The notes under the pieces were generated by a model. The model had not been told where the DNA came from, ran no database searches, and saw nothing but the letters and a program-made list of their open reading frames with translations. Of a DNA stretch of 64,000 bases, positions 6,457 to 49,060 are shown piece by piece. Made by a program: the position numbers and the translations under genes. The stretch lies in contig CDMY01000897.1 in NCBI GenBank assembly GCA_001179505.1, positions 62,001-126,000 of the forward strand, written 5' to 3'. Each line of letters starts with the position of its first letter. Within the stretch, counting starts at the first letter, position 1. This DNA comes from Vitrella brassicaformis CCMP3155 (taxonomy: Eukaryota; Protista; Chromerida).

Positions 6457-6487
<31 letters not shown>

Positions 6488-22050: not shown

Positions 22051-22162
22051 CTTTACCCTCAGTACTGATCTGTAGAGACGTCACGTAGGCCCCCCGGCCC
22101 GCCCCCGCGCATGCATGATGCGGGCGTAAATTTAAACTTCGCCAGCCATCCACCACTTCGCC

Positions 22163-22586
22163 CGCCTGGGCGCATCGGGAGCCGCTGACGGCTGGCATGG
22201 CGGGTCAGAGAGAACCGACCGCGTCATAATGACGGCACGCAGCGTTGAGGTCGCTTTGCTGACGTCTGCTGAGAGTAGGCACTGCTAGAAAGACGAGGCG
22301 AAAGAAAGTCAGATATCCGCTGCTTTGCTGGCGGCAGGCTTCACTTCACTCAGGCAAGCTACAGGGAGGGGAGCGGATTGCGAGCAGTTTCACGGAATGA
22401 GCTTCATTCGACGAGAATTTCGCGTGTTCGCGAGACGGGAGACGTCTCTCTGAGAAAAAGCGCGATTTCATCCGTTTTCCCCCTCCTGTGGCCATCCTGC
22501 TCCTTCCTCTGCTCATCCTTTCTCTTTGGGCGGCTTCCGCAAACGGCTTTCTCTTTGGGGCGCCAATTCAAAATACGCCCACAGGT
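22163..22586 (+). repeat. 5' module copy 1 (~420 bp; upstream sequence plus signal-peptide-like exon); inverted homolog of 48611-49060
   Basis: Direct comparison shows long near-identical stretches (CGCCTGGGCGCATCGGGAGCCGCTGACGGCTGGCATGGCGGGTCAGAG ... GCGGCTTCCGCAAACGGC). It reads PVAILLLPLLILSLWAASANGFLFG and ends at the donor AG|GTAGAC (22585). Confidence 0.9.
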
Positions 22587-22666
22587 AGACCTACCGATGG
22601 TGGCCGCCGGCGTTTCCGAAGCTGCTGAGGAAGCCCCATGCTGCGTGTAGTGCGCACAGCGCACAG

Positions 22667-24705
22667 TCGCGCCCAAGAGCTGCACCTCTTGTGCCGTTCC
22701 CCGCAACAGCAAGAACAGCCGCTACAGCAGCAGCAGAGCATGGGAATCCTATCGCGCGGCGAGGGAGAGGGAGGGGGAGTTGATCGGGGCGAGGGACGAG
22801 GTCGAGGACGACGAAATCGGGGACCAGGAGCCCGCTGCTCTCCCACTGTCAAAGACCAGCGCCACTGCCACACTGCTCGAGGGGCGAGGAGGTGACAAAG
22901 AGGACGACTGGTGCGGTGATGTTGGCGATGAGGAGACCGCCATCCCCCCAACGAACACCATCGCCACCCACTGCACCAGCATGAGGCCCAGCAAGGCCGG
23001 CGACAGCAGCAGCAGCGGGGACGGATCAGGAGAGGAGACCCCTGTGATGCTGAAAGAGGTGCGAATACCTGCACACAAACACCCAACGCACGCTTACCCA
23101 TTCGACGTCTGTATTGTCCTTTCTACATAGGTGATGGCCGCATCATCGCCAAAAGAGTCGACGCTAGACTCACCACCCCTGCCGTCGCTCCTACTCAACT
23201 GCCCCTCTCCCAACTGGTCAGCCATCGACGACATGGGCACACCCCCAGCCATGTTCGCATCCCCATTCACCGGCGCCTTCCCTCCCACCTCCCCATGCAT
23301 GTATTCTCGCCCTTCGGCCCACGACCATGGGAGGTGCTTGCACCCAAGGGACCCCCCGTGCCTCTTGCCGTCATGCCGGGCGACACGGTCCCGCTCGGCC
23401 ATGGGGTGGAGTCCGAGTGTGAGCGCCTGTTGCGGGGCGGGAGGGGGGGGTATATGGTGGCGGGGGGCATCTTCAGAGAGGGCGAGAGGCCCCAGCCTTC
23501 ATGAAATGGGTAGCGACAGATCACCGGGATGCGGGGGAGTGTCGGGTGAGGGAGCTGTGTAGAGATCTTGAGTTTGAGGCGAGCCAGCTGCGCAAGGCCG
23601 AGGCGGCGGTGGGCATGATCCAGCAGCTCCATCACACCCGGCTCAACAGCACCCACCCATCGGCGGGCGGCACGCGCCTCGTCCCCCGGGTGCTGGCGGA
23701 GGCCGCTGACGTAGAGGCGCTGCGACCGGTGGTCAATGAGGACGGGGAGAGGGTGGTGGGCACTGGGCGATGCCTAGTCATGACCAAAGTGGGCGACGGT
23801 AAGTCTCTATCGGAGCACGCAGACAGACAGACACACAGACAGACAGACAACGGGCGACATACACACACAGATTCGTGAATGAATGTACCTTGTCTGCGCC
23901 TCAGGTCTGTCGCTCAAAAAGTTTGCCGAGGGCCGCAACGCCGTTCCCCCGTTCCTCAAACCCACAGCCGCCGTCAACACCAGCCGCGCCATCCTCGCCC
24001 TCCACAACGCCGAGATCACCCACAATGACCCGCATGCGGAGAACTTTTTGATGGCCGACGAGACGACGGGTGAGGTGGGCGTCATCGACTTCGAGACGTC
24101 ACGCGACATGCGGCAGGCGAGCCCCCCGCCACTCGACAACCGCATCCGCCCCCCGGCCACGACGGTCGGCAACATGCAGGCCGTGTTGAAGGAGCGCGCC
24201 ATGCGGGATGAGGAGGTCGGCTACCACGCCGACCTGGTGGCCGTGGCCAGCTCCCTGCTGCCGCTGTGCTGCGACAACTCGGTCCTGTCGGCGGTGGTGT
24301 GGATGGACGCCCGGGACCTGGTGAAGGGGGTTCTGACCAAGTGCGAGGATGGGCGGCTGAGCAGCATGGAGGAGGTGACGGCGGCGTACCCGGAGGCCAT
24401 CAAGGAGGCCTACACCAAGGCCGTCAAGACCATCGGCCAGGACGAACGCCTCACCCCGGCCACCCACGCCATCTCCCTCAAGACGGCAGGCCTCTTCCGC
24501 GACGTCTGCATCGGCCATGCCGAGGGGCTGGCACCTGAGGTGCTGCGGGCGAAGATGGCCACCTACTGCGACGAAGTGACGGCGGGTGAGAGAACACTTG
24601 TGGTGTGGGTGCATCCGTGTGGCCATCTCGCTATCGCTCTCTCCGTGTGTGTGTGTGTGTGCAGACATGGTGAAGATTGCACGTCAAGAAACCACAGCTA
24701 TGTAG
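22667..24705 (+). pseudogene. Atypical (APH/RIO/Kdo-like fold) protein kinase, disrupted by two -1 frameshifts
   Basis: Gly loop LLRGGRGGYMVAGG, AFMKWV (beta3 Lys), CLVMTKVG hinge, catalytic loop HNDPHAEN, and VIDFE. The reading frame has to shift at about 23295 and about 23500 to join these motifs. Last exon DMVKIARQETTAM* (TAG ending 24705). Confidence 0.7.
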
Positions 24706-24738
24706 CGGGGTGTGTCGCCCTCCACGCCACGCCACGCC

Positions 24739-24907
24739 GACTCCCCTCTTCCACCGTGCGTCGCGCCAGAAGCAGGTCACCGACCCCGACTTTGCCATGC
24801 CCGCCGCAACACGATCGGTGGCCCTCCCACTCCAGCAGCAGCAGCAGCAGCAGCAGCTCGGTGAGGGCGACGCTGTCCATCTCAGGGGCACCATGGACCT
24901 GCGTGGC
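24739..24907 (+). repeat. Copied coding-exon fragment; inverted copy of 7079-7241
   Basis: GACTCCCCTCTTCCACCGTGCGTCGCGCCAGAAGCAGGTCACCGAC...CACCATGGACCTGCGTGGC matches the reverse complement of 7079-7241 except for a few substitutions and a longer CAG tract. Both read TPLFHRASRQKQVTDPDFAMPAATRSVALPL(Q)nLGEGDAVH.RGTMDLRG. Confidence 0.95.
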
Positions 24908-24992
24908 AGGTGTGCCATGTAATGTCATGCTGTGCTGGTGACTTCTTGATCATGTGAGTTGACGGGACGCACGTCAGTCCGCCACTGTAACG

Positions 24993-25057
24993 ATCGTTGC
25001 CTACATTTTATATCTGTTGGTTCCGTCTATCCATTTCTCTCGCTTTTGCGCGGTGTG
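24993..25057 (+). repeat. 3' module copy; homolog of 40951-41016, 41318-41375 and (partly) 45729-45751 on the minus strand
   Basis: ATCGTTGCCTACATTTTATATCTGTTGGTTCCGTCTATCCATTTCTCTCGC-TTTTGCGCGGTGTG versus the reverse complement of 40951-41016: 5 substitutions and 1 gap over 66 positions. Confidence 0.9.
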
Positions 25058-26382
25058 TGATGGGGGCAACGGAGACACACACATATGCTGATCAACTCTA
25101 GTCAAAGGTGTGGTCCTACTACAGTACTCGCCCACCCACCCACCCACCCATCAATGTAGGCACAAACTCAAGAATGCGGGATCCAACAACGCACACCAAT
25201 GTGTGTGTGAGCTGCGCCTGCTGTGAGACGTGGCATAATACCAACCCACCCCGCCTCACCCATCCATCCATCACAGTGAAGTGTGTGTCTCTCAGGAGGC
25301 GGATGGAGCGTCATCAGCGTCAGAGGTAGCTCACACACACACGCTCAACCTTCGGTGTCTCTCTTTTTGTGTGTGTGTGTGTCAGCGAGCCTGATTTCGC
25401 CTCAGCAACTCGATCGAGTATGAGTGGATCGGCCGGAGTTCTGCCGCATCCAGGGTCGCGAGATGAACCCATTCGAGCTAGCCTATGTGATCAACTACCT
25501 CCAGCGGTCAACCTAGTGGCGCAAGCACATTCTCCCACATGTTACGTGGACGTCAATCATGTTGTGTTTCTGTTTAGAGTATATGCAAGACGGCTACAAT
25601 AACTGCAAGAGAGGAGGCGGCGGCGAAAGTGTAAGAGCCAGTCAGGAAAGAGACATTCATGAGATGCTTTCCAGTGCGGCCTTTCTGTGTCTCCAGTGCG
25701 GCGCCACCAGCAGCAGTAGTTCCTGCTTCTGACCGACAGAAAAACCACAACGACGGAGAAGAAGGTACGTAACCACACCCACACACACGAAGCAGGGAGG
25801 GGTGCATCCATATGAATGTGGCGCTGTGTGTCTGTGTGTGTAAGTGTGTGTGTGTGTGTGAGTGATTTCGAGACGAGTGATGAACTGCCAGAGATGAACC
25901 AGCGTCGATGACAGTCACAGACTGACGAATCCATGACGACTTCCGTACTGGTGCACATGTCAAGTCAACACACACACATGACGTCTCCTCTATCGATCCT
26001 AATTAACTACGCACTCTCTCTTGATGACATCGCTATTCAGTCAGTGATCCAGAACTTCTTGTCTATCTATCTACACGCAAGTCAGGCAGGGCAATTAAGG
26101 CAGAAAGAAGTAACTGAGAGAGAGAGAGAGACACGGACAGATAAAGGGCTGACTGTAACGAATAAACCGGACGAGGATCATCTCATCTAAGCAGCCATTC
26201 ACCCACCCACCCACCCACCCACCCATCAACCCACCCACCCACCCAACACACCCCACCCCACCCAACACACTGAACCGGTCCGCGCACAGCACACGCAACC
26301 AACACATATATACACATAGACAGTCAGACACACTCGCTCTCTCCGTCGTCGTCTCGCGCTGGTGAAGTCCTTATCAATCATC

Positions 26383-29300
26383 TCATCTCCCCCTCGGCTG
26401 GCCATGGCCGTGCTCAGGGAACACCCGCACCGTCTGCGTCATGCCCTCGGCGGCGAACAGGAAATCACCACCCTGGTCGAAAAACAGCGAATGCTGCGGC
26501 CGGCCAGGTGCAGTGTGAGGGTGGGACTGCTGGGAGATCGCCGGCGTCACTCTGGCGCGGGTGGGAGCGTGGGAGTCGTGTGCAGACGCTTCGGCGGGGG
26601 TCTGCATGCCGTGGGTGAGCAGGGGCTGCAGGTCGCTCTCGTCTGTTGCCGAACGACGATGGAGCCGCTTGTGTGGCTGATGCTGCTGTGGGTGGGCGGG
26701 CGGGATGCCAGGCAGAGGGCCGACGTGGTCCTCTGCAGTTGTGGCCGACGTGTACTCGTCGTGCGGTGTGGCGGGCTCGCTGGCACAGGCCTCCTCGTCG
26801 ATGCAGGAATCGAAACAACCCTTGAGGCAGCACACGGTACCCACAAAGATGACGAAGCCCATCAGCTGCAGCGCCAAGATGCTCTCGACGGCCAGCTCTC
26901 CCGACAGCCGATGGATGAAGCGGCTCGCACTGCCCCTCTCACGCACACGCACCTCACGGACCTGAACCAGCCGAAGGACACAGACAGAGAGCATAGCCAC
27001 ACATGCGGTGTGCTGGCTGCACATATGGCCGTGGAGCATCCATCCCACCTGCATGAGTGCCTCCATTTCCCTCTGCTTCTCCGTTTGATGCCGCGTGCGC
27101 GCGAGCGGCTGGTGCACCAACGACACGGAGGGGGGAGAGCCGTGCTCCACCAGCACTGTCACGTAGTTCATGCCGCGGGCCAGCCTGCACACAGACAGAC
27201 AGACACACACCCACAGAGAGAGACACACATGCAATGCGGCGATGGGTGGTTTTGGCAGTGGTGGCACGTACCAATCTGGTGGGATTTTCATCTCGTGTAG
27301 CTCTTGTAGCTCCTCGTGTTGCCGCTGCTGCTCGTCACTCTCATCATCAGGAGAGACGTCTTGACTGTTTTCGTAGGGCGAAGAAATGGCAGTTATCGAC
27401 CCATGGTGGCCTGAACCAACACGCACACAGACACGGCAACAGAGACCTTTGTCCGCACTGAGCCCACTGGTATCGCCTCACTGACCGATAAGCCTGTCGC
27501 TGCACCAAACTTGCCCAACAAAGGTGCCGTTGACCCGCAGGAAGTACCGCCCGTTCATCACGTTCGGCGTGTGCGGCACGTGAAATGAGTAATGCGACCA
27601 CACCATCGCCGACCCCTCACCGCCCCCTCCCCCTCGCCCCCCATGCAGCCCGGCAAAGTGCCACCAATCCGCGACCTTTCTGCCGTCCACACGCACCTTG
27701 CCCCCTCCCAGCCCTGTTCGGTGTATCCTGGGGGCCCTGCCGCTGCTGGTGTGATATGCGACCGGGGGCTCGATTGAGTGCACCACAGAGAGGAAAGCCA
27801 GGTGCCTTGTCGAAGCTGGGATGGCCACGGACAGCTGCACGAACGGCTCGTTCGTGCCGTTGGCCGTCCGCCGTTTGCGTATGGGTGCCGCGAGTGGGGG
27901 AGTGGTGAGGAGGAGGGAGGTGTTGGTGAAGATGTGCATGTGGGAGAACTGGTTGGTCAGGGGGAGGTCGATCTGCATGATCCGCGCCTTGGGGGAGAGC
28001 CACTGGCGGACAGGAAGATACGTCACGTACCTGGCCACCACACACACACACACACACACACACAGTCCCGTGTGTTTCATCCGCTTCACTGACTGACCAT
28101 AGGTAGTCGGTCTTGCCCCTGGTGACGGCAATCTGGTCGATCATCCCTCCAGCCCGCAGGCCCGCCCTTCCCCCTCCCTCACAGCACTGCCCGTCCTCAC
28201 ACACACGCGGCACCTTCACACCGATCGTCCGCACATCGCCGGGAGGTATCACCTGCTCTGGCAGTAAGTGTGTGGGTGCCAGTGCGTCTTGATAGGGGGA
28301 GGGGAGGATGGCTGGCGGTGAGGAGGGGAGGGGGTCTGTGGTGGCGTAGAGGGCGGTGGGGTCGCTGTTCTTGACCAGCAGGCAAGACCTGATGGCGGAC
28401 GGCACACAGCAGAGTGCCGCGCTCTCCGCGTGGACTTGTGGGTTGGTTCTTACCAGGGGAGGATTGAGTATCGACATTTCCTCCACCACACCCGGACGGG
28501 TGACGTAGCATGGTGGTTGCACAACACGCCATGCGTGTCGCCCCACTCCCACCCAATGCCATACCCCCGACCGCCATAGAGCACCCTGCCCCTCACAGAC
28601 GCATGTGCGCCTCCCTTGCGAGTGGTGCCGTTGTTGCTGGCCTCAAGATGCTGCTGCTGGAGGTGTCTGGCGATCGACGGCATGTACTTGGATATAAGGG
28701 TCGGTGGAGGGGGGAGAGAGTCAAGAAGGATCCACTCGAGTGTGTAGTGGAGGTAGGCCGCGTGTGAATACGCCTCCGTGGGCTCGGTGTACTCGTCGAC
28801 AAGTCTGAAACGATGCGAGATGTCCGCTTGCCAGAGGCAGGCAGCCGTGGTGTGGGTGTGTGTGTCGTTACGTGTGTGTGTCGTATATCACTGCAGCGCC
28901 TCCCCTGGCGACAAAGCGCATCGACGCGAAGGCACGGTCCTCGCCAGAGTACTCCAAGCCATCTGCACACACCAAGAGCCGGTCCGGTTCCACATACGAG
29001 TGTTTCGTCTGTGCTCGCCTGTTTGCCTACCGTCTGTCGGCCACTGATCCAGCCACAGACAGGGCGTCCCCCGCTCTGAAAACAGACAGGCCATGTGCAT
29101 CATCATCACACGAAAAGCTGCGTGCCGTGAATTCCTTTACTTATGCAGACGTCCTGCAGCCAGTCGCCTGTGACACCATGGTGACTCCCGGGGTAGGGTG
29201 CGCCCGGCCCGCCACAGTATCGTCCGACGCACGACGGCACGTAAGGCCCAAAGCGACTGACAAGACAAGGGCGGCCATGCAGCTCGTCGTCGCTGTTGTA

Positions 29301-30459: not shown

Positions 30460-30892
30460 GCTATTCACAGTGGCGGGTCGGGTAGAAGAGACGACACGAG
30501 AGGCTATATCCGATCAAGCATCGTCCTTTCAACCATTCTGGCTTCCTTCCGTGCCAGATCTCATTCCCGCAGCAGCGGTTTCAGGGAGCGCCAGGTCCCA
30601 TTTTAGCTCGCAGAGGAGGGAGAGAGGGGGAAGGAGAGAGAAGAGGAGAGAGTTCGATCCCGGCACTCGGCGATCACGTCAGCTCCGAGTGCCGGGTGGC
30701 TTTCATCTGAACAATTGAGGCCAGAGAGCAGGCACAAGTGTGTGCTCTGCCTGCTGCAGAACCATCGCTAAGTCGATGTCACTTATTGATTGAGGTGCGC
30801 ATCGGTCAGAGAGAGCCAAGTTTCATGTATGTCGATATAGTATGTCTGTGTGAGATGTGTGTGTGAGTGCAGGGCGCGTGAGTGGCCACTCC

Positions 30893-32692: not shown

Positions 32693-33169
32693 GGAGGCTG
32701 GGGGGGATGGGGGGCATTTTTAGCTGCCGACTCATCGTGTGAGAGAGGCTGGCACAAGCCGATGCTATCAGAGGAAGCGAGACCTCAAAGAGAGAGGGAG
32801 GAACGCCTGTAGTCGGACGAGAAATGACGTCTGTCATCACTGTGTTCGCCTGGTCGGCCTAGCTGTGTGTGCGCGGATGCTCATTCATTGGATGTGACTC
32901 AACTCCACGTGTGAGACGTATGAGTGCTCGCGCTAAGAGGGTTTGACGGCCACACACAGGTTCGCGCATTGCTATGAGTCGACACTTCCTTCACACGCAC
33001 CCACCCTGACGACGCCAAATACACGGGTGCCTCGACAATGTCCCTTTTGCAATGTGTGATTGATTATCTACAGTCTCTGCACAAGCAGCACGCCTCGCCC
33101 GGCGCGCCAACAGCTCAGCTCAGTCACTATGTACAAGCATGCACTGGCAGATCCTGACAGACTCCCTAG

Positions 33170-34339: not shown

Positions 34340-34373
<34 letters not shown>

Positions 34374-34608: not shown

Positions 34609-34642
<34 letters not shown>

Positions 34643-35969: not shown

Positions 35970-36204
35970 GATCAATTGCACTCGTGTTGGTATGATCTGT
36001 GGGAGATTGGTAGCTGATCCTCGCAGTCCAAGACGCTCTCCACGGCGTCGATGTCCACTCCGATAAGCTCGCACTTGAAAGCTCGCACCCCAAAAGGCAA
36101 CACTCGAGCAGTCCGCCAGCAGTTTCGGCGAGGCATTGAGTTCGCCAGGGCGGTGATTGCCACTCTCAATTCGTTCCGGCTGCTGTGATTCGCCGTCGTG
36201 AGGG

Positions 36205-39200
36205 ATGGAGGTGAGCAGCGGCGAGACGAGCGAGCGGAGCGCCGCCCTGAGCCCTCTGATCAAGCGCAAGCTGGAGGAGCTGCTGCCGGGCGTCGATGCG
36301 GACGTTTTGACTGAGTATGTGGAGCTCTTCGCCGCACAGAAGAAGGACAGGGGCGACTTCATCGAAGATCTCAAGGAGTTTCTCGGCGACAAGGTCAGTG
36401 GACACAGCGCACACGCAGAGACACACACACGTCAGTCTTGCCTGTCTGTTGTGTGTGTCGGTATGCGTCAGACGGTGGACTTCGTTGACTGGTTCCTGGC
36501 CCACCAGCAGCGCGTGTCGGCACCTCCCGAGGCAGCACCGCCACCAGCATCCCAGGAGGAGTCGTCTCGCGGCCGCAGCCGCGACGACCGGCGGGACGAC
36601 CGTGAGGACCGTGACTATGACCGATACGACAGCCGGGATGACGACAGATACAGCAGGGACAGAGACCGCGACAGACGCGACAGGAGATACAGGGTCAGTG
36701 AGGGAAGAGAGGAGAGTGGAGTGGCCACGAGCACCCTCTGACTGACGGGGCAATCCAATCAATCGTTGCCCTGCCCGTCTTGCCTCTGTCTGTGCTGTGT
36801 GTGATAGGATGAGCGGTCGCGTCGTGAGTACGAGTATGACCGCGATCGCGAGAGACGTGAGAGGGACAGGTATCGTGAGGGGGACTACAGGCGCGACAGG
36901 CGGGTGGACGAGAGGGACAGGCGGCCCAGGCCGCCCTCATCAATCGCCAACGAGGACCTCAGGAACGAGGTGAGTGAGCCACCAAGGTCATGTCGTCATG
37001 CTCGTGCATTGAAGTGACGGATGCACTCCACTGATGCACCTCGTAAGTCTCTGTTTGTGTATGGTTTGCGTCTGTCTGTCTTTTTACTTATGGCATGGCA
37101 GATTGACCGGCGTGCGCAAGAGCGAGACAAGCGAGAAGGTGAGGGAGTGAGTGAGGGCGTGGTGTGAGCTGCAGGATTCCACTTAGGATTCCACTTCCAC
37201 CCTCTCTCACTGTGATGTCCATTCCCTTGTCCTTTCCGTCCACACAGCCGGTGGTCGTGCCCGTGGCGGTCCCTTCGGCAACCTGATCCTCCGAGCTGCT
37301 CAGGAGGCTGCTGTGTCAGCGGGCGGGGAGGCCGCCGCTGTTCCACCTGGTGCTGCAGCTGCTGCACCCAAGACTGAACACAGGGTGAGCCACGCAAACA
37401 CAGATTGCCACAGAGGCCACCCCTCACCCCACACAATGTAATGCCGCCCCGCCGTGGATTTCTCCTTTGTCTTCCACATGATCGATCCATCAGGAGGGCG
37501 AGGAGGTGCACATGCAGACGTCCATCGAGATCGTTGACGACACCCCCGCCCCGCCCGGCCCCACACCCATCCCGTCGCCCGCAGCCGACCAGGAGCAGCC
37601 TGCAGCGGCAGCAGGATCGGCAGCGGCCGACCAGCAGATGGGTGGGGCGCCCCCAGAGCGGCCGGACCGACGCAGGCCGCGCGAGGAGCCGCCTCACCCA
37701 GAGGGAGGACCTGCTGCTGGTGGTCCAGGTCCTGGTGTTGGTGGCGGTCCCTTCATGCCGCAGCAGCCGCCACATCGTGTTGTGGTGCGTGTGGACCCCA
37801 TCACGGGTCATCGTGAGAACGCCCCGCCGCCGTTCAGTGCGGGCAGGCCGCCGTACAGCTACGAGCCGCCCTTCGCACCGGCCATCCCTGGGTGAGCGAG
37901 CTTGTAAAGGAAAGAGGGGAACACACACGACGACGCCTGTGTGATGTGATTGGTCTCTGTCTGTCCCTCTTGCTTGTGTGTTCAGTCCGCGAGGCCCTCC
38001 CCATCCGTATGGTCCGTTCCCCTCCCACCAGGCCATGCGCGGCCCGCCACACTTCGCCCGCCGAGGGGGGTTTGGTGAGGGTCCGTTCGGACCAGACCGC
38101 CCGCCACGCTTCCCCTTCGCCCCCCGACCATTCAGCCGCGGCGGCAGGGGACTCACCCTCACACCCGGGCCGGGCGCCTGGCAGGGCCCGCCGGGTGGTG
38201 GCGCTGGTGGTGGCGGTGGCGGCCCGCCGCAGCACAATGGCATGGAAGAGGACACACCGATCCCGCCCGACCAGCAGCAGCCGCAGCAGCAACAGCAGCA
38301 GCAGCCGGACATGGGAATGGGTGGTATGGGTGAGGAGCCGCACATGCCGCTGCCACCGGGTCAGGGTCCGTTCAGTGGTCAGCAGGAGCCGGGCAGGCCT
38401 GAGGGCGACGTCGAGATGGAGGGCATGCAGCCCACCAAGAAGATGAGGGCCGTCCTCAGGTGGGGGGCGTGGGGTGGGGGAGGCGCCTCGTGGGCTGTGT
38501 TGTGTTGTGGGGTGTCCCATCTCTGCTGTATGTGTGTCATTTGTGACATGACAGACCCAACCCATCGTTTCAGTGGCCGGAGGACGGCATGCAGATCGCA
38601 CCGCCGCCAGGGTGAGTCAGTGAGTGAGAGAGAGAGAGAGAGCAACTCGCACCCAATGCTCTGTGACCCCATCCCATCAGTGTGAATGAGTTCGGTATGC
38701 CATTGGGTGGTCCGGTTGGCGCGTTTGATGGCGGGGGTCCGATTGGCGCGTTTGATGACGGGCCGCCGCCGCCCCCCGAGGACCCCATGGCGGGGCTGCC
38801 CAAGGGACTCAAGCAACTCGCACACCTCTTCCCCGGCAAGGTGCGCAAATGCCCTCTGACAGACGGACGGATGTGACTGTTTTGCACGTCTGTTGTGTCT
38901 GTCGTGTGAACGGAAACATCAGAAGTTGAAGCGTTGCCGGAATTGGCCGGACTGTCCGTTTGGCGACCAGTGCAAATATGTCCACCCGTCCTCATTTGTA
39001 CGCACAAGGGGAGGGCGGAGGGGAGGGCGGAACAGCAAAGCGATGCGTCGAGAAACCAACCATCGATATATGCTATGCGTGTGCTTGGCTGTGGTGGTTG
39101 GTTGGTTCAGTGCAAGATGTGGCCCGGCTGCAGCTTTGGCAAGGAGTGCCTCTTCATCCACCCACAAGTGCCCTGCAGATTCGGTAGGTACACATGCATC

Positions 39201-40242
39201 CAATCCACTGCATTCCCACTCTAAGTCGATTGATGTGACATTCGCGTGTGTGTGTGTCCTTATTACCAAAATGACGTGATGTCAGGTATCCGCTGCAAGA
39301 ACGCCCGCTGCAGCTACGCGCACCCGCCGGGCTGGCAGCCATACGGCATGCTCGACACCATCAACAAGGGCGACCAATACTTCAACTCACTCACACCGGT
39401 TAGTAACCACTCTCTCCCACACACACACGCAGAGGCATCGACGCATAATCACCTCTCCACCGCTCCCTCCCCTGTTTGTGTGTCGTGTGCACGTCAATCA
39501 ATCAATCAACTAATCAAGCAGCACTGGTCCAAGGCCAACCGCAAGGCTCTCCACAAGAACCTGTCCCTCAACAGGTCGCAAATCGACCAGTTGGTCATCA
39601 AGCAAGACGAAGAGCGACAGGCGGCCGCCTCACAGCCAGGCGCCGAGGGGGACGCATCGGGCCATCATGACTGCATGCATCCCCACCAGGAGGGCGAGGT
39701 GCACTTGGGTGCCGACGGGGACGTTGAGATGGGTGTGGAGGGGGGCAGTGGGCACCAGAACGGCTGGGGGATGGGGTACGGCGACGAACATTACGGCCAT
39801 GGCCACGGGGAAGAGGAAGACGATGAGGAGACCACACGGGTCAGTGAGTGAGACGGAGACAACGCGCACACACACACACACTTTGTCGAATCTCTTTCTC
39901 CTTCCATTCCATCCACCTCAGAGGCAATTAGAGGAGCTGCAGCAGCTTGAGAAGGCCGAGGCAGAGCGCGACACCTCTGACCACCCGCACCCACACCACC
40001 CACCCGGCACATCGGCCGACACAGCAGCGGGCGGCGGCGGCAACACCACCTCCAACCCCAACGCGTCCCACTCCCTCACCCGAGAGGAGTATCTCCGTGT
40101 CTATGGCTTCCAGCCGTCGAGTGCGGGCGCCACTCCTCGCCAATTCACTCAGCAAGGCAGCATCGAGTCGCAGCAGAGCCAGCAGCAGCAGCCGGGCCCT
40201 GCTGCTGCTGGAGGGGCGGGTGGGGGGCAGACGGCAGCATAA
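36205..40242 (+). CDS. NAB2: Nab2/ZC3H14-like polyadenosine RNA-binding protein (PWI-like N-terminus, RD-rich and P/G-rich regions, tandem CCCH fingers)
   Basis: LIKRKLEELLPGVDADVLTEYVELFAAQKKDRGDFIEDLKEFLGDK|TVDFVDWF (PWI-like). Fingers CRNWPDCPFGDQCKYVHP, CKMWPGCSFGKECLFIHP and CRFG..RCKNARCSYAHP have Nab2-type spacing. TAA ends at 40242. Confidence 0.75.
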
Positions 40243-40950
40243 TGAAGGGGAAAGAATTCGATTCGCAGTGTGCATGTTGATGCTTTCTTGTTTAATGGGC
40301 TGAGGGATAGGGAGGGAGGGAGGGAGGGCCCGATGACTGACTGACTGACTGACGGACGTACGGAGTTTTGTCTCTCAGTCAGATGGTGGGGTGTTGTTCG
40401 TGGAGTCAGCTGTTCACGCTTCCATGCAATCCTTGCTCGTCTCGTTCGTGCTTTGAATCAATCAACAGCTTTGGCTGTCTGTCTGTCTGTGGTTGTATGG
40501 GTGGTGTGGTGTGGTGCCGTCTCCATGCCACGTCATACACACGCACACACACACACACACACATTGGTGTGAGCCACTCTGTCCTCGTGAGTGTGTGTGT
40601 GTGTGTATGTGACCTATGCTGTGCGTCCCGTCCCGTTGGATCCCGCATTTTTCAATAGCAGTGTCTCGTTCCATGACCTCATGACATGTGCTGGGTGGGC
40701 TGGGCGTGGTTTTGCCCGACAGACAGACACCCGGCAGACAGACAGACGGACAGGCAGGCGCAAGATGCGGGTGACAGACTGATACACAGAAAAGCTTATG
40801 GGTTATGCGTGTGTGGGTATCTGTGTGTGCCACTGTGTGGGTGGATGGACGGACGGATGCGTGGGACCAACCAACCCGTAAGTATACTGAATGTACTGAA
40901 TTGAATGATGGAGAGAGTCATGAGGGAGTGGGGGATCATCACAGCATGTC

Positions 40951-41375
40951 CACACCGCGCAAAAGGCGAGAGAAGTGGATGAACGGAGCCAACAGATATA
41001 AAACGTAGGCAACGATAGCCACGACACCACACGGACGACACGAGGGAAGGCACCATTCGCACACACACACTCCATCCGTTCCATTGCGTGGCATGAGTCA
41101 GTTGCGTCACACACACCCGACTTGTCACTTGTCAGGCGATGTACGTATTCCCCACCCTCGTACACCCACACACACAGACCCACACACCATCCATCCATCC
41201 GTCCAGCACTTCCCCAGCCCCCGGCCGCACTGCACGGCCTATCACTCTCTGGGTGGCGAAGGGAAGGCAGACAGAGGTGGAGAATGGCAAAAAACAAGCT
41301 CTCTCCGTGCACGGCCTGCAAAAGGCGGGAGAAATGGATAAATGGAACCAACAGATATAAAACGTACGCAACGAT
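40951..41375 (-). repeat. Two nearby copies of the 3' module (40951-41016, 41318-41375), reading AIVAYVLYLL(A/V)PFIHFSRLL
   Basis: AAAAGGCG(A/G)GAGAA(G/A)TGGAT(G/A)AA(C/T)GGA(G/A)CCAACAGATATAAAACGTA(G/C)GCAACGATAGCCA occurs twice about 360 bp apart. Confidence 0.9.
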
Positions 41376-42433
41376 AGCCAGAGTGGCTGCCTGGCGCCCA
41401 CTTTGACTGGCATCTCTGCCGCAGCATGAGAACGGGTGCTGCAGGAAAAAGGAGGGTGGCTCAGCCCCCTTCTCCTTCTGCCGCTGCTGCTGCTGCTGCT
41501 GCTGGGCCTGTTGCTGCTGGGCCTGTGGAGTCTTCCATATCATAATCTCTCCGCCGTCGCTGTTGGCCTCCTCATTCTCTGCACGACCTGACACATCCAA
41601 CACATCCGACCAACACATCCGACCAACAAAAACAAGTGCAGTGCAGTGCAGTGGACACCATACACACGTGATTGGATTGACAGACACGCCCTGCCCTGCC
41701 CTCTCCCTGCCCTGTACGTATGTATCTGCTTTGTGGCTGGCACTGGCTGCTCACCTTGTTGCGTCTCCTCCTGCTGCTGCATGGCCTGCATCAACTGCAT
41801 GGCCTGCTGCCCCGAGTGACACTGACGAGGACAAATCACAGAGACAGAGGTGGGAGCCATATGAATGGCTTGAGTGCTGGGTGCTATGCTGCCCTGCCAC
41901 TTACGGGTTGCACTTCGAATGGCGAGGGCTGGATCCAATCTGGGAGAGACTCCGCTGACACAAGCAGACGAAGAGTCAGTCAATCAGATGTTCATATCAC
42001 GCGATGGACTGATTCTCACTCTCTACCTGATTGGGCTCTTTGTGTGCGCCCCTCTCCCGCATGCAAGTCATGTCGGAACTTTTCGACTCCGCTGGGTCCA
42101 GTAATACCTCCTCAGGCAGCGCACCTGACATAACGTACGTACATACAGACAGACGAGAGAAGAGGAGCTGACACGAATGAAGGCTCGCCCGTCCGTCGTG
42201 TGTGTCTCGTGTGTGTGTGTACCTAGTCCGATCATGGGGTCTGTTGGTGGTGGGCTGAGCCGACCGACTGCAGGCACACATTGATGGATGGATGCTGCAG
42301 TGTACTGGCTCTCCTTCCATACGTACATACTTATGAGATTCAGCAGCACAGGGTGTGATTCCTCCGTTCCCCAGTCTGGTCCCAATAATTGATAGAGTGG
42401 GCGGTCGAGGTCTTGGTCACTGTGAACGACAGA

Positions 42434-42464
<31 letters not shown>

Positions 42465-43459
42465 GTGGGCTCGGCATGCAAAGATGCATACACACGCACC
42501 TCGTCTCTGTGAATTTTCTCTGTGCCCGGAACACCGCCGCCGGTTTTCATGTCTTTCTGCCACACCTGTCCACATGCGTCAATACACGTATCTTCAGAGA
42601 AATATACAGGCAGGGAGGTCCCCCACGTGGATCTGCAGCTTCTCTCGGTGGGTATCATGACGCGCCACACGCACAATTGAAACGTCCTGAAGAATACACA
42701 CAAGAATCAGCCATATGTGCGAGCGAGTTGCGCACGTACCTTTATCTCTTGCGCGATGAGCAGGCGGCTCAGCGGTGTCGTTACGTACTTCTCCAGGTAC
42801 CTTGATGGTGCATATGTGAAAGGATGTGCACACACCACTCAGCAATGCGTCTCTACTACCTGCTGAGTGGTCTTGCCCCGTATGCAGGTGGTCTAGTGCC
42901 TCGACAGAGAACTCTACCTGTGCACGCACTAATACTTCTGTCTGTATGTGCGATTCTGTGTGCTGGAGTGTTTGAATACGGAGATGTCTCGGCCTGAGAG
43001 TCTGTTTGCCAGCTCCCTCGCCTGGTTCTTCAGCACACCGCGCAGCTGCGCCTGCACACATGCGAATACGACTGCGTATATCAAATTGGCGCGGCGGTCA
43101 CGTCACCCACCTTTGTGAGGGGCTCGAACACCATCACTGCATCCAGGCGGTTCAAAATTCTGCACAGGACACACATGCTCGTACACGTGTCATCTGTCGG
43201 CGTGCTTGACACACACCCGGGCGGAGAACGGCCTGAACGTCTTTAATTGCCCGAGCCTTTGCCGCTTGCTTGGCCTTCTGCAAAGGCCCATCCCATCGTT
43301 ACATCTCGCTTTGGTGTGTGTGTGTGTCGTTGTGTGTGTGTGTGTGTGTGTGTGTGGAGAGCGACGCACGTTGTCACGGCCTTCGAAGACCCCCGCCACG
43401 GGGTGCCGAGTGCCGACGTTGGATGTCATGATGATGACCTGCACGTATACCATGTATGC

Positions 43460-45770
43460 AGAGAGATGCATGTGTACGTAGCAATGCGGCATACTCCGTG
43501 TCAAGGTCCAGCTCGTAGATGGAGCTGGCCGAGCTCGAGGGGGGCGAAGTTGCGGAGGTTCTGCAGCTCGATCTCCTCCAGAGGATCAAGCGGCATCAAT
43601 TTGGCCCCACCTGATCATGGATCGATGAGACACGAGCGACACACACATAAAGTGACCACCATAATCCGCCCGCCCTTCAGGGGGGCCAGGCCAGGCCTCC
43701 TCTGTAGTGCAGCCGCTGGTCTGTGCCGGTCAGTCGGTCTTCTTACCGCTGGCCGCATCATCTATGCTCGCCGGGATCTCCTGCTGTTGATGCAGCGGTG
43801 CCGGCAATTGGAAAGGCATCTGGGGCTTGGGTGCGGGCGGGATCGACGGGAGTACCACGTGAGACGACCCGAAGCCGCCAGCCATCATGCTGCCGTCACC
43901 GAGAGTCGGGCTCACCACACCACGTGCTGGTCGGATACAGCGGCTTGGGTCATGCCCTGGGGTGACGACATGGTGGGCAGAAACGAGGGACCAAACCAAG
44001 GGTGATCCAATGCCTCTTGAGCTGACACACAAATCACAGAGCGTCTCTTCAGGGATCCATCCAGATGGGAGAGCTATCCTAACCTCACCTGAGAATAGTC
44101 TGTTGTTTGGGTTGTACTCAAGGAGTCTGCTGACGAGGTCAGTGGCCGCAGGGAATCGCTTAGCCACCGCATCATCAAAACTTACACCCTGACACAGATG
44201 AAGGGGTCAGTTGTGTCTCAGGGCTTGTCTGTGTTGATATGGCTGCTGTCTCCCGCCTCTTACCTGACTGAGTATTCTTAAGACTTCCTCGTTGCTTTTG
44301 CAGCTGGACAAGTCATATGGGAGATAAACCGTGAATCAACACATACGCGTGGGGGGATGTCTCTGGCTTACAGGATGACGCCGCAGCTCCACAGATCCGA
44401 CGCCCGTGTGTACTGGCCCTTGTGGCACTCGGGGGCTGCACACAACAGACACACTTTCCCACTCTGGTCTGTATTGCTTCCTTCGCTCATTCTCTCACCA
44501 TGTAATCTTTGGTGCCGACTCCCCATCTCGAAAACGAACGCAGCTGATGTGACAGCACAATGAGATATACTTCCCTTGGTCTGCTATTTCCTTCCGAATA
44601 CAAATATGTCGCTTACTGTCCCATGGGTCTCCCCATCCGTCCAGCGGTGCACCTCCACGGCCCAATACCGAGGATCTCCCTCGCCTTCCCGCCTGCACGA
44701 CACATCAGAACCGAGCCCACGAATGTGTCAGTGTGTGAGTGATGCTTGTGTGTTGATCACTTACGCAGGCACTGCCGCCTGGTGGCGGAAGCCGCTCAGG
44801 CATGCCTTGAGGAATCTGCCGTTGGTCAGCACCGCCTCAAACAACAGCACACGCGACGGCTTGAGGCCACGGTGGACACAATTGCTGAACACAGGCAACA
44901 GAAAATGTCTGTGCGCGACTGTATCCTCACAAGATGTCTGCCTTGCTGACCACTGATGCACCACTTTGAATCCCTCCAGAGCACCCCCTTCGAACCACCC
45001 GATCAGCGAGTCCGACGCTGTCTTGACCTTCTCACTGAACGACACACACGATGCCGAGGATCAGTTTGGCTCTTGTAGCTTCATTTTTCGTTCAATTTAC
45101 CTCTCGAGCAGCGATTGTACGTCGCCGCTGGCTCTTACGCTGGGGATGAACACGTATGAGTCCTTGACGGTGGCCTATCCGACAAGTGCGATGTACGGTG
45201 ACCGTGCAGCCACATAGGACTAAGCGCAGGCGGCACACGTGATCTGCATAAGACACGCACACAACCTGTACTGATGCATTCACGTATGCAGCCATCGTAC
45301 CATGACGTAGGTGTGTGGGCGTGGAGTGATTTGGTATACCTGCATGACGAAATGTCCAACACGTTGCCTGCTGGCTGCGGCAACAGGGACGCTCTCTTCG
45401 CCACCACCAACTACCTCCAGTCCATGCGTCACGGTGTCTAAGTGAAAGGGAGAAAGGAAGAACCATGCACGCCGTGAGCGCTTTCCTCTTGCGAAGTCCG
45501 TGTCGTGAACAGCCGTCCCATGGACCTTGTGCGGTCGCTCACTTGGCTTGGGTGTCTTGGTGTATTCAAGGCGCTTCCGTGCCATCCAACCAAGTCGGTC
45601 TGCCCATACGACCATCTGCACACAAAGGCACACAGAGGGGGAGAAGGAGAGAGACACTGTGATACGCACTCTAGAGTGGTGCTCACTTGTTGGGCGTCAC
45701 GTCATCGGTGTATCCACAAGACTGTCATAGATATAAAACGTAGGCAGCGATGAACGCGGCCCTCCCGTGC
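43460..45770 (-). pseudogene. Degenerate CAMK/CDPK-like kinase nested between ClpB exons
   Basis: Spliced exons in kinase subdomain order: WMARKRL (II), HFVMQ (V), CVHRGLKPSRVLL (VIb; HRD to HRG), KACLSGF (VII; DFG lost), APECHKGQYTRASDLWSCGVIL (VIII-IX), KSNEEVLRILSQ|GVSFDD...AATDLVSRLLEYNPNNRLFS|AQEALDHPW (X-XI), then LQNLRNFA (junction-like). No EF-hands were seen. Confidence 0.75.
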
Positions 45771-47184
45771 GCGACCTCCGACTGGCCATGTGACGGGTGC
45801 GCACGCCTGAAAGAAAGAACGCGGCTTCATTCATCCTTACTTGTGCGCCGCTTCATTCATCCTTACTTTTATCAGAGAATACCCCTCTTCCCCTTTGTTG
45901 CCTATTCGCTCACCAGTGGTGCTACTCGGCCCTCTCGGCGCGTTCGATTGGCGCCTCCTCGCCACCTTTGCCACAGCGCCCGCAAAGGCGACAGCAGCCA
46001 GGGCCGCGACCGAGACGACGGGGAAGGTGAAAACCATAAGGGGCAGCACATGGCCGGCGACAATCACCAAACGTTTCCCCTGCGTGAGCAGTCGTATGCA
46101 TGCATACACATGAATGCAGCTGCTGCATATGCACCGACCTGTGCGTCTGTGAGGCGGCCGTCGTCCAGCTCTTGCAGCAGCGTGTTGAATATATGCGGAT
46201 GTGCTTTTTCCATTTCGTCGAACAGCACCGCGATGTACACATCAATACATATGCACGTGTCAGGGGAGTAACGACATATGTGTATAAACACACCTGTAAG
46301 GGCGCCTCTTGACGGCCTCTGTGAGCTGGCCGCCCTCCTCGTAGCCCACGTAGCCGGGCGGCGAGCCTGATGTGTATCATATAGAATGTGATTACATGTA
46401 TATACATACATCTTATATACCAATGAGTCTGCTGACTGAGTGGCTTTCCGGGAACTCCGACATGTCGAAGCGCACAAGGTTCTTCTCGTCGTCGAATGGC
46501 TGCATGCATGTGTGCACACACGTGTACACATGTGTCTCTGGCGGTCTGTCTGTGTGCAGTGAGTACGTCACCTCTGCTGCGACTGCCTTGGCAAGGTTCG
46601 TCTTGCCCACACCTGTTGCAAACACGTTGTGTTGTGTTCTGTGCGAAGACTAGGCCTGGATACCCACCTGTAGGCCCCAGAAATAGAAAGGAGCCCAGCG
46701 GCTTCCCCCGCCGGCTCAAACCAGACCTGAACACAAACACACAGAACACAAACAACCTTTCTATGTTGCGTGCGCGTGTGTGTGTCTCGAAACATGCGCG
46801 TCAGCACCCCGATCTCAGCACGGCATCGACCACGGCTTGGACGGCGTAGTCTTGCCCCACCGCTCGCTGAGATCAGCAAAGATGCCCCTCTCTCTCTCTC
46901 GCCCTGTGTGTGTGTGCGGACCTGGTGGAGGCGCTTTGAGAGGTCCAGAAGCCTCTCGCTCTCGCTGGTGGTCAGCTTGGTCACGGGGATGCCCGTCCAA
47001 TCAGACAGCTGTGCACAAATGGATGTGCAGGTGTATGCACGTGTGAATGTGCTTCTCAAACCAACGAGCGCACCACAGCGGCGATCTGATCGGCGCCGAC
47101 GATTATGACATTCTGTACACACCATTAACAGGTGTACGTGTGTGCAATGACATTATGTATACACGTACCTGTGCCGAGATGCCT

Positions 47185-47254
47185 GGACGACCGAAGCCTT
47201 TCACTTCACCGCCGAGCACGGACGACCGAAGCCTTTCACTTCACCGCCGAGCAC
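47185..47254. repeat. Perfect 35-bp tandem duplication inside a ClpB exon (frameshifting)
   Basis: GGACGACCGAAGCCTTTCACTTCACCGCCGAGCAC x2. Confidence 0.95.
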
Positions 47255-48561
47255 GCCTCGTCGACTGCAACGCACGAATGCATATGTGTGATACAGTGCT
47301 GTGGCATGTGAGAATATGTGCACCAACCGATGTCGACCGCCTTGTCGGGCTGGTTCCGGTAGGGGACGTACCGATTGCTGCAAAGGCACAGCGGCATCCT
47401 TGCGCACCGGTATTTGAGCGTGGCGTATGTGTACGTGAGCTGCACGGCGGCCATGAGTGCGTCGTCAGCGATGCGGACGTTGTGGCTCTTCTCGTACTTG
47501 TCCTTCACGCCTGTGTACATCCACACAAACATAAAAAGTACGTGCCTGTGCTCATCTATCTAGGTGTGCATGGGTGTGTATATGAACCGCGCAAAATCGA
47601 TCTCACAAACACCTGCACGCAGCCAGAGACACGGACAGGTCATATATGCAGCTCCCGTGTCTCTGGCCGCTTGCCTTCTGGAACCGTCTCTCAAATGCGG
47701 CGTCCTGTGTACACGGACATGCACAGAGACCCACACTTCTTCTTTGGATGCTCACCTTTTCTATGTGCTTGTGGTATTCGTCTTGAGTCGTTGCGCCGAT
47801 GCGTCTGCATGCGTACGCATTAGTGGGCTGTGCAGATCCCTCCGCGGTTGTGTGTGTGTGTACTTGACGCTTGGCGGGCTTGAGCAAGTTGGCGGCATCC
47901 ATGGCACCTTCTCCTTTCCCTACATACAGTGTATGTGTCTTCGCTTGTGTGTACACAAGTGTGTCTAGTACCTGCCCCAAGCCGAAGATTCAGCTCGTCA
48001 AAAAACAGAATCACCTCGCCTGCATTCCACATTCGTGAAGGAAAACGTGTGTATGCATACACATGTGCACTGCTGTGCACCTTTGCTCTCTTCTGCCTCC
48101 TTGATCACTTGCTTCAGCCGCTCTTTGAAATCGCCGCGCAGCTTGGCACCTGATCGATCCGCCTCAACACGCGTATCCATGCAGACTGAGTGAGCAACGA
48201 ATTGTATTGTATTATATGTATTGGTCCACCCGCAATCAGGCCAGCCAGGTCGACTTCCACAACACGACTGCCTTGGAGCTGCTCGGGCACGCGGCCCTCT
48301 CGAGCGCGACGGCCCAGCGCTTCGACGATGGCCGTCGTGCCCACTCCCGGCTACTCCCGGCTCACCTACGAGAAGAAGGCTGCTTTTGTTGTGTCAGACA
48401 TAAACCAGCCACAAAGCGAGCGATGGGGGGACGAAGTAAAGACTGAGATCTTTTCGTACGTGGTCTTGCTGAGGATGGTCACGACGCGCTCCAGCTCTTC
48501 TTCTCGGCCGATGACTGGCGCAGCTGGACTGTTTGTCAGGTCCCTGCACCAATGGGATGAC

Positions 48562-48595
<34 letters not shown>

Positions 48596-48610
48596 CTGGA
48601 CCGTATGCGT

Positions 48611-49060
48611 ACCAGTTGGCGTGTTGAATTGGCGCCCAAAGAGAGAGCCGTTTGCGGAAGCCGCCCAAAGAGAAAGGATGAGCAGAGAAAGGAGCAGGAT
48701 GGCCACAGGAGTCGGAAAATGGATGAAATCACGCTTTTTCTCAGAGAGACGTCCCGTCTCGCGAACGCGAAATTCTCGTCGAATTTTGTAGCTCGCATTT
48801 TGTCTGTCTAGGACATTCCGTGAAACTGCTCGCAATCCGCTCCCTGTCCCTCCCTCCGTGTGGCTTGCCTGAATGAAGTGAAGCCTGCCGCCAGCAAAGC
48901 AGCGGATATCTGACTTTCTTTCGCCTCGTCTTTCTAGCAGTGCCTACTCGTCCGCAGACGTCAGCAAAGCGACCTCAACGCTGCGTGCCGTCATTATGAC
49001 GCGGTCGGTGCCCTCTGACCCGCCATGCCAGCCGTCAGCGGCTCCCGATGCGCCCAGGCG
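48611..49060 (-). repeat. 5' module copy 2; homolog of 22163-22586
   Basis: Reverse complement aligns to copy 1. It reads PVAILLLSLLILSLWAASANGSLFG and ends at the homologous donor G|GTACGC (48612). It lies between the ClpB pseudogene and GGPPS. Confidence 0.9.

What the first reader, a model, noticed from the sequence alone, without database searches (positions are those of the whole stretch)
22163..49060. Candidate exon-shuffling cassette: the same 5' (signal-peptide exon) and 3' (TM-like) modules bracket unrelated cargo at two loci
Seen: locus A (+, about 22163-25190) and locus B (-, about 49060-40620) share a ~420-bp 5' module and a ~65-bp 3' module in the same relative orientation. Short exact matches add support (AATGCGGGATCCAAC at 25173 vs 40635; GACGGGACGCAC at 24961 vs 40621). 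The interiors are unrelated: an atypical kinase plus a copied exon in A, ClpB plus a CDPK-like kinase in B. 5' homology stops at a phase-1 splice donor in both copies (22585, 48612). The module reads as a signal peptide (PVAILLL.LLILSLWAASANG) and the 3' module as AIVAYVLYLL.PFIHFSRLL. Inference: this is either a non-autonomous gene-capturing element (conceptually like Pack-MULEs or Helitrons) or a 'signal peptide - variable cargo - membrane anchor' cassette producing chimeric secretory proteins. No transposase, TIRs or TSDs were seen.
Basis: partly seen in the sequence, partly recalled or inferred. Interest (0 to 1): 0.8.

Follow-up and report, generated by a model that had tools for sequence, protein, structure and literature searches.

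The report
Duplicated gene ends around different genes
Three places in the genome of the alga Vitrella brassicaformis share the same gene start and the same short stretch near the gene end around unrelated genes, but the supposed membrane anchor is a small intron from a family of about 900 look-alikes and the supposed signal peptide is out of frame with its start codon in every copy, so this looks like patchwork gene duplication, not a gene-capturing element.

Summary
The repeat is real and extends further than reported. The 5' module (22162-22587 + / 49061-48610 -) is 95.5% identical between loci A and B. Its 105-nt core has one more copy in the genome, on contig C347. All three copies have the 3' module 2.4-7.6 kb downstream on the same strand, around different genes: an atypical kinase in A, a ClpB-like gene with a nested kinase in B, and J-domain genes on C347.

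The hydrophobic leader frame was once under selection: B and C347 differ only at five third-codon positions, and all three copies reach the donor in phase 1. No copy has an in-frame ATG; each is one frameshift away from one.

The "TM" module in B is exactly an 86-nt GT-AG intron of the annotated Vitrella protein P0016. Its 28-nt core is a dispersed motif: 97 strict and 936 relaxed copies, against 0 in the reversed control. It lies in an intron on the sense strand in all four cases that annotated proteins let me test. There are no TIRs, TSDs or transposase.

Best reading: B is the parent gene, and A and C347 are rearranged partial duplicates that kept its two ends. The intron-motif family is the more novel result.

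The parts
22162..22584 (+). R5, locus A: upstream region plus leader exon. The hydrophobic region starts at 22488 (VAILLLPLLILSLWAASA) and the exon ends at 22584 before G|GTAGAC.
   Evidence: 95.5% identical to B. No in-frame ATG; the nearest ATG, at -91 nt, is out of frame.
48613..49061 (-). R5, locus B: the same module. The hydrophobic region starts at 48706 and the exon ends at 48613 before GTACGC. A 23-nt insert carries an ATG (MRATKFDENF...) that is out of frame with the hydrophobic region.
48524..48612 (-). Candidate 89-nt intron (GTACGC...(CA)n...GTCCAG). It would join the leader exon in frame to the first ClpB-homologous exon (...TPTAAPVIGREEELERVV).
   Evidence: Phase arithmetic and junction translation. 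Inferred, with no transcript evidence.
46142..48523 (-). ClpB-like gene, front part. The exons cover TIGR03346 positions about 172-700. There is no N-domain, and the NBD1 Walker A reads GVGTT.
43600..45521 (-). Protein-kinase-like gene nested in a ClpB intron, approximate extent. Its ATG is at 45521 and its first exon has FVMQVY in place of the VAIK lysine. Exon 1 (45502-45254) is 78% identical to C347.
   Evidence: The Pfam match is below the cut-off.
45724..45751 (-). Fourth copy of the 28-nt motif in the window (6 mismatches). It lies inside the ClpB intron, upstream of the nested kinase.
42740..43159 (-). ClpB-like gene, back part (VIIMTSNVG, GARPL, D2-small domain). It is annotated as protein P0016.
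41316..41401 (-).
   Evidence: P0016 maps at 100% identity to 41588-41400 and 41313-41245 only if this stretch is removed.
40951..41021 (-). R3b: second tandem copy of the module. It lies past the P0016 stop codon and has no AG at the matching position.
   Evidence: (D10).
40635..40950 (-). Non-coding block downstream of R3b, ending in ...AATGCGGGATCCAAC. It is 74% identical to C347:355679-355428, and a trace of it survives in A.
23615..24922 (+). Locus A cargo: an atypical (Kdo/APH-like) kinase, annotated protein P0001. The stop codon TAA is at 24920-24922. The upstream homology to paralogue P0004 changes frame between 23483 and 23495.
24972..25057 (+). R3, locus A: motif at 24993-25020, GTGAGT 39 nt upstream, a 1-nt deletion, and the acceptor AG replaced by CG. 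This is a degenerate copy 70 nt past the P0001 stop.
25173..25187 (+). AATGCGGGATCCAAC: the shared right-hand end of homology in A, B and C347.

Best explanation
Locus B is (or closely resembles) the parent. It is one ClpB-like gene whose 5' end is R5, made of a promoter region plus a first exon that once encoded a signal-peptide-like leader. Its last intron is R3a. A kinase gene is nested in one of its introns, and a non-coding tail ends at ...GGGATCCAAC.

Loci A and C347 are partial duplicates of that gene. They kept both ends but had their interiors remodelled. On C347 a deletion fused the leader exon to the first exon of the nested kinase, and J-domain genes fill the rest. In A a member of a dispersed atypical-kinase family and a dispersed 'copied exon' lie between the ends. 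This patchwork could come from one template-switching duplication or from deletion followed by insertion.

R3 is not a membrane anchor. It is a short spliceosomal intron of a large family defined by a 28-nt core, and it travelled with the gene end.

Shown:
- the collinear shared blocks;
- the intron status of R3a;
- the size of the motif family;
- past selection on the leader frame;
- the absence of an in-frame ATG in every copy.

Inferred:
- the direction of duplication, from B to the others;
- the mechanism;
- that R5 acts or acted as a promoter plus leader exon for the ClpB-like gene.
For: - The R5 core has only three copies, each followed by R3 on the same strand.
- B and C347 share four collinear blocks: R5 core 89%, kinase exon 1 78%, R3 85%, downstream block 74%.
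- In B these blocks are simply the ends and one inner piece of a ClpB-like gene with a nested kinase.
- ClpB homology in B starts at model position 172 with no ATG and no N-domain. It starts right after R5, and a phase-compatible acceptor gives ...TPTAAPVIGREEEL.
- At the C347 junction a short CGCA microhomology sits at both B breakpoints.
- R3a is an annotated intron. The same motif lies in introns of the genes for P0004 and a P0003-like protein.
- In the leader h-region all 5 differences between B and C347 are synonymous third-position changes. Exon length from the V codon to the donor is 97, 94 and 91 nt, so all three copies are in phase 1.
- There are no TIRs or TSDs.
- A is a mosaic. Its last exon has copies on C973, on C507 and at window 7079-7216.
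Against: - Both rearranged copies break within about 10 nt of the same splice donor. Random deletions would not be expected to do that.
- R5 is 95.5% identical between A and B, but R3 is only 84-91% identical, so the two ends may not have been copied at the same time, or R5 was later homogenised.
- No transcript data were available, so no use of R5 or R3 in mRNA is shown, apart from the annotated protein models.
- The microhomology is short (4-5 nt) and could be chance.
- The C347 R3 abuts an assembly gap.
Confidence: 0.55

Rival explanations
1. R5 and R3 are the first and last parts of a small host gene: leader exon, one long intron, short last exon. The gene was duplicated three times, and the kinase, ClpB and J-domain genes are nested in its intron.
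For: - The R5 donor and the R3a acceptor are both phase 1, so joining them directly stays in frame.
- Homology ends at the donor and resumes near an intron end.
- The leader frame was under selection.
Against: - In B the R3a intron and the exons on either side belong to the annotated ClpB C-terminal protein P0016.
- ClpB needs an upstream exon for its start.
- Four of the five R3 copies have no AG at the acceptor position.
- Three different same-strand nested genes in one intron would be odd.
Confidence: 0.12
2. This is a non-autonomous mobile element whose ends are R5 and the R3 block. It picks up host gene fragments in the manner of Pack-MULEs or Helitrons.
For: - Three units with different, partly broken cargo: a frameshifted kinase, a kinase lacking the VAIK lysine, and a ClpB without its N-domain.
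- A and B share the same left and right ends.
Against: - No TIRs: the best local score between the ends is 5.
- No TSDs, and no 5'-TC/CTRR-3' ends.
- C347 lacks the outer 270 nt of R5.
- There are only three copies in 72.7 Mb.
- B and C347 share an inner block (kinase exon 1), as paralogues would.
- The published genome paper reports only 1.5 Mb of TEs.
Confidence: 0.08
3. This is a working 'signal peptide - cargo - membrane anchor' cassette that makes chimeric secretory or plastid-directed proteins.
For: - The h-region VAILLLSLLILSLWAA plus ASA is signal-peptide-like and was conserved by selection.
- Splicing in frame to ClpB is possible, and phase-compatible acceptors exist in A.
- Acquisition of presequences by exon shuffling has been proposed for secondary plastids (PMC3017844).
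Against: - No copy has an in-frame ATG.
- The TM module is an intron in B and lies past the stop codon in A.
- Neither P0001 nor P0016 contains either module.
- Protein searches with exon ORFs from the 5' part of locus A found no annotated protein in the size range searched.
Confidence: 0.1
4. These are two unrelated small repeats that lie near each other by chance, or an assembly artefact.
For: - The R3 core is very common, with 936 relaxed copies.
- The C347 R3 abuts a run of N.
Against: - The extended R3 subfamily has only 5 copies at 4 loci.
- All three R5 cores have such a copy within 8 kb downstream on the same strand.
- A and B differ by 19 substitutions and several indels and have unique flanks, so they are not a collapsed repeat.
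Confidence: 0.03

Closest known systems
Introner elements: families of near-identical, transposon-derived spliceosomal introns in Micromonas, Aureococcus, dinoflagellates and others (PMC9860276; bioRxiv 10.1101/2020.10.14.339549)
   Same: There are hundreds of copies of one conserved sequence inside introns of unrelated genes. It is on the sense strand in every testable case. In the short members (86 and 73 nt) the element is the whole intron, with its own GT, pyrimidine tract and AG.
   Different: Only a 23-28-nt core is conserved across the family, and the arms are alike only within subfamilies. In longer introns (185 and about 415 nt) the core is a small part. No TIRs or TSDs were seen and mobility is not shown. 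The 2022 survey scored Vitrella brassicaformis CCMP3155 as having no introners (Supplementary Table 4, ie = 0).
Acquisition of targeting presequences by exon shuffling in organisms with secondary plastids (discussed in PMC3017844, citing Kilian and Kroth 2004)
   Same: A separate first exon encodes a hydrophobic leader and ends at a splice donor. It is found at 95.5% identity in front of two unrelated genes.
   Different: In the present assembly the leader is out of frame with its ATG in all copies. Targeting has not been tested. The promoter region was copied along with the exon.
Gene-fragment capture by Pack-MULEs and Helitrons (own knowledge)
   Same: Conserved ends surround variable, partly broken host gene pieces.
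   Different: There are no TIRs, TSDs, terminal hairpin or CTRR end, and no autonomous partner. There are three copies only, and the copies share an inner block.
Mosaic segmental duplication by template switching or microhomology-mediated repair (FoSTeS/MMBIR; own knowledge)
   Same: Locus A is a patchwork of pieces whose closest copies lie at different loci. The breakpoints are sharp, and a short microhomology sits at the C347 junction.
   Different: The mechanism cannot be proven from one assembly. The repeated use of one breakpoint beside a splice donor is not explained.

Membership tests
Gene-capturing DNA transposon (Pack-MULE / Helitron-like) | Terminal inverted repeats, or Helitron 5'-TC ... 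hairpin-CTRR-3' ends | tested here: not met
   The left end is CCGCCTGGGC... and the right end is ...GGGATCCAAC. The best local score of the left end against the reverse complement of the right end is 5 in both A and B.
Gene-capturing DNA transposon (Pack-MULE / Helitron-like) | Target-site duplication, or a fixed A|T insertion site, at both ends | tested here: not met
   The flanks of A and B show no shared duplication.
Gene-capturing DNA transposon (Pack-MULE / Helitron-like) | Many dispersed copies with the same ends and unrelated insides | tested here: inconclusive
   There are three loci only. C347 lacks the outer part of R5. B and C347 share an inner block.
Gene-capturing DNA transposon (Pack-MULE / Helitron-like) | A related autonomous element (transposase or Rep/helicase) in the genome | not tested
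   None lies inside the three units. No genome-wide search was made.
Signal peptide - cargo - TM secretory cassette | Start codon in frame with the n- and h-regions | tested here: not met
   A: the nearest ATG is out of frame. B: the MRATKF... ATG is at frame offset 2. C347: the MAKFST... ATG is at frame offset 2.
Signal peptide - cargo - TM secretory cassette | Leader frame conserved as protein | tested here: met
   Between B and C347, 5 of 5 differences over 48 nt are synonymous third-position changes. All three copies reach the donor in phase 1.
Signal peptide - cargo - TM secretory cassette | The C-terminal module is a translated exon | tested here: not met
   It is an 86-nt intron in P0016. 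It lies past the stop codon in A. The third-position excess is 8 of 14, which is not significant.
Signal peptide - cargo - TM secretory cassette | Leader exon spliced to the cargo in mRNA | not testable with these tools
   Only phase compatibility could be shown. No transcript data could be reached.
Introner elements | Many copies of one sequence inside introns of unrelated genes | tested here: met
   97 strict and 936 relaxed copies against 0 in the control. The motif is intronic in the gene for P0016, the gene for P0004 and a P0003-like gene (two introns). Only four introns could be checked against annotated proteins.
Introner elements | Sense orientation relative to the host gene | tested here: met
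   All four checked introns are in sense orientation. So are the copies beside P0001, in the ClpB intron and on C347. The sample is small and partly non-independent.
Introner elements | Similarity over the whole intron, with the element supplying the splice sites | tested here: inconclusive
   This holds within subfamilies (86-nt and 73-nt introns). Across the family only the core is conserved.
Introner elements | Evidence of insertion: TSDs, or presence/absence between paralogues or strains | not tested
   No TSD is obvious at the two short introns by eye. No other strain or sister genome was available.

The most novel reading that the evidence does not exclude
The 28-nt core ATCGYTGCCTACATTTTATATCTGTYGG marks an undescribed family of roughly 900 sense-strand intron elements in Vitrella brassicaformis. 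These would be introner-like units of about 75-90 nt, each carrying its own donor, pyrimidine tract and acceptor. The published whole-intron survey scored this genome as introner-free and would have missed them. R5 would be a portable promoter-plus-leader exon that has been placed in front of different genes.
Probability: 0.3. Interest if true: 0.7.

Novelty: new variant of a known kind. Interest (0 to 1): 0.5.

Why it matters
If the reading holds, the window shows how new gene fronts arise in a free-living relative of apicomplexan parasites. A promoter and leader exon were copied almost unchanged in front of unrelated genes. That process has been proposed, but rarely caught in progress, for the origin of plastid and secretory targeting signals.

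The by-product may matter more. A 23-28-nt sequence occurs about 900 times and, wherever it could be checked, lies inside an intron on the sense strand. It is either a family of mobile intron-making elements in a genome reported to have none, or an unknown splicing or regulatory signal. Either possibility can be tested at once with the public Vitrella annotation and RNA-seq data.

Tried and rejected
- **Spliced-leader RNA or relic leader.** The motif's sharp 5' edge and the GT donors after some copies suggested this. I dropped it because the motif lies inside introns of annotated genes, and no paper links Vitrella with spliced leaders.
- **TATA-box promoter.** The reverse complement of the motif contains TATAAAA. 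I dropped this because the motif occurs at any position along genes and always on the sense strand.
- **Motif as a coding 'IVAYILYL' peptide.** The 39 copies show no codon-like variation and no preferred open frame.
- **Rfam.** It gave only microsatellite-driven miRNA look-alikes.
- **Protein word searches.** Searches with exon ORFs of the 5' part of locus A were blank. A blank covers only proteins of 0.55-1.75 times the query length.
- **Literature search for the motif sequence.** No hits.
- **Earlier notes of this scan.** They did not cover the motif.


Full report
**Organism and place.** The assembly has 72,700,666 bases in 1064 contigs, and the window is C897:62001-126000. These figures match the published Vitrella brassicaformis CCMP3155 assembly (PMC4501334). 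A source of protein P0016, which is encoded in the window, names it as a product of that strain.

**Check of the observation.**
- The inverted repeat 22162-22587(+) / 49061-48610(-) is real: 400 matches, 19 mismatches and 40 gap columns.
- Both edges are sharp. The 3' edge lies just past a G|GTA donor; the last exon base is 22584 in A and 48613 in B.
- The short module is real too. A 24993-25057 matches B 41016-40951 at 91% and B 41396-41318 at 84%. These are two tandem copies in B, 359 nt apart.
- The interiors are unrelated at the DNA and tblastx level.

**Genome-wide census.**
- The 5' module has only the two full copies plus a 105-nt core on C347:360427-360325(-).
- A more sensitive local comparison showed that C347 also carries the 3' module at 356102-356005(-). 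It has the same order and strand and lies 4.2 kb away. All three copies of the 5' core therefore have a 3' module downstream.
- The extended 3' module also stands alone on C973.
- The interior on C347 is again different: one kinase exon followed by two tandem J-domain genes.

**What the 3' module is.**
- Its 28-nt core, ATCGTTGCCTACATTTTATATCTGTTGG, occurs 97 times with up to 3 mismatches, against 0 for the reversed control. A relaxed 23-nt form occurs 936 times, against 0.
- In 30 sampled copies the core has razor-sharp borders and mostly unrelated flanks. Copies often form same-strand arrays in tandem gene families.
- A search with the open frame through the module found the annotated Vitrella protein P0016, a ClpB C-terminal protein containing PF10431. 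P0016 maps at 100% identity to 41588-41400 and 41313-41245 only when an 86-nt GT-AG intron at 41401-41316 is removed. That intron is the module.
- The same core lies in a 185-nt intron of the gene for P0004. It also lies in a 73-nt and an approximately 415-nt intron of a P0003-like gene. In every case it is on the sense strand.
- Donor-like sequences are enriched within 45 nt upstream: 21 of 39 copies, against 32% at random positions.
- Across 39 copies the variation is not codon-like and no frame is preferentially open. Within the five-copy subfamily the third-position excess in the 'TM' frame is 8 of 14, which is not significant.
- In locus A the annotated protein P0001 ends at a TAA at 24920, 70 nt before the module. 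That copy has lost the acceptor AG and carries a 1-nt deletion.
- The 'membrane anchor' reading is therefore not supported.

**What the 5' module is.**
- Between B and C347 the 48-nt hydrophobic core differs at five sites. All five are third codon positions and all are synonymous.
- The exon from the V codon to the donor is 97, 94 and 91 nt in A, B and C347, so all three copies are in phase 1 despite indels. This frame was therefore translated and under selection.
- No copy has an in-frame ATG. B has MRATKFDENFAFARRDVSL in one frame and KKRDFIHFPTPVAILLL in another. C347 has MAKFSTDARRDVSHGKKRDFIHFSP in frame with its ATG but is shifted before the hydrophobic core. A reads FDENFA...KKRDF...VAILLL in one frame but lacks the ATG, which in B lies in a 23-nt insert.
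- Each copy is thus one frame break away from an intact leader. Either all three are decaying or the assembly has indel errors at short homopolymer runs.
- R5 also contains the word TGCGAGC. An earlier, untested note of this scan proposes the related 8-mer TGCGAGCT as a Vitrella promoter word; only B's copy at 48797 has the full 8-mer.

**Gene content of B.**
- ClpB-like exons run from 48523 to 46142 and from about 43.4 to 42.7 kb.
- They start at model position 172, with no N-domain and no ATG of their own. An acceptor at 48524/48523 would join the leader in frame (...TPTAAPVIGREEEL).
- A kinase-like gene is nested between the two ClpB parts. This agrees with the scan's note on the same window.

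**Relation between the loci.**
- B and C347 share four collinear blocks: R5 core 89%, kinase exon 1 78%, R3 about 85%, and a non-coding block 74% ending in AATGCGGGATCCAA.
- On C347 the leader donor lies 14 nt from the kinase ATG. In B these two points are 3.1 kb apart, with the ClpB front part between them, and a CGCA microhomology sits at both points.
- A shares with B the whole R5, a degenerate R3 and the terminal 15-mer.
- Between them A holds a paralogue of a dispersed atypical-kinase family, with an apparent frameshift at 23483-23495. It also holds a last exon that has copies on C973, on C507 and at 7079-7216 in the window.
- No TIRs or TSDs flank the units.

**Conclusion.**
- The simplest account is that B is a ClpB-like gene whose two ends were retained in two rearranged partial duplicates.
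- The mobile-element and secretory-cassette readings are not excluded but fail defining tests.
- One weak point remains unexplained: both rearranged copies break within about 10 nt of the same splice donor.
- The intron-motif family is, as far as the searched literature shows, undescribed. The 2022 introner survey scored this strain as lacking introners.

Noticed in passing
genome-wide; window copies at 24993-25020(+), 40989-41016(-), 41348-41375(-), 45724-45751(-): The 28-nt motif ATCGYTGCCTACATTTTATATCTGTYGG has 97 strict and 936 relaxed copies, against 0 in the reversed control. It is intronic and on the sense strand wherever annotated proteins allow a check. Its function and mobility are unknown.
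   Followed up: partly
window 24731-24907(+) and 7079-7216(-); L009:309-464 (C973); L046:5466-5632 (C507): The last exon of the locus A kinase (TDPDFAMPAATRSVALPLQQQ...) is itself a dispersed piece, with copies 80-87% identical at unrelated places.
   Followed up: partly
window 23483-23495(+): Homology of locus A to paralogue P0004 changes reading frame within 12 nt. This is an apparent frameshift, which may explain why the annotated protein P0001 starts at an internal Met at 23615.
   Followed up: partly
window 48117-48350(-): The NBD1 Walker A of the ClpB-like gene reads PGVGTT instead of GVGKT, so the lysine is replaced. The gene also lacks the N-domain. It may be an inactive or decaying paralogue.
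   Followed up: no
window 22379, 48834, 48797: R5 holds the word TGCGAGC. B's 23-nt insert holds ATGCGAGCT. The palindrome GAGACGTCTC sits just where the C347 homology begins. These may be promoter elements.
   Followed up: no
L049 (C113:50000-58000), 6052-6470: The approximately 415-nt motif-bearing intron of the P0003-like kinase gene contains a second copy of the coding piece GVSLMSFCKR...KPVRPLVKLVMAV. This could be a pseudo-exon or an alternative exon.
   Followed up: no
C897:230262-230358(-), outside the window: There is an 88% copy of the 95 nt that lie just upstream of R3b (window about 41116-41022).
   Followed up: no
window 36200-40300(+): A gene on the opposite strand has a PWI-like N-terminus and CCCH zinc fingers (CRNWPDCPFGDQCKYVHP), resembling Nab2/ZC3H14. 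It converges on the tail of locus B. This rests on reading the ORFs only.
   Followed up: no
L048 (C579:21000-28500), about 1354-1386(-): In one tandem gene family the motif follows a GC-type donor (GAG|GCAAGT). If it is not spliced out, the protein would end in ...IGAYILYLFGL*.
   Followed up: no
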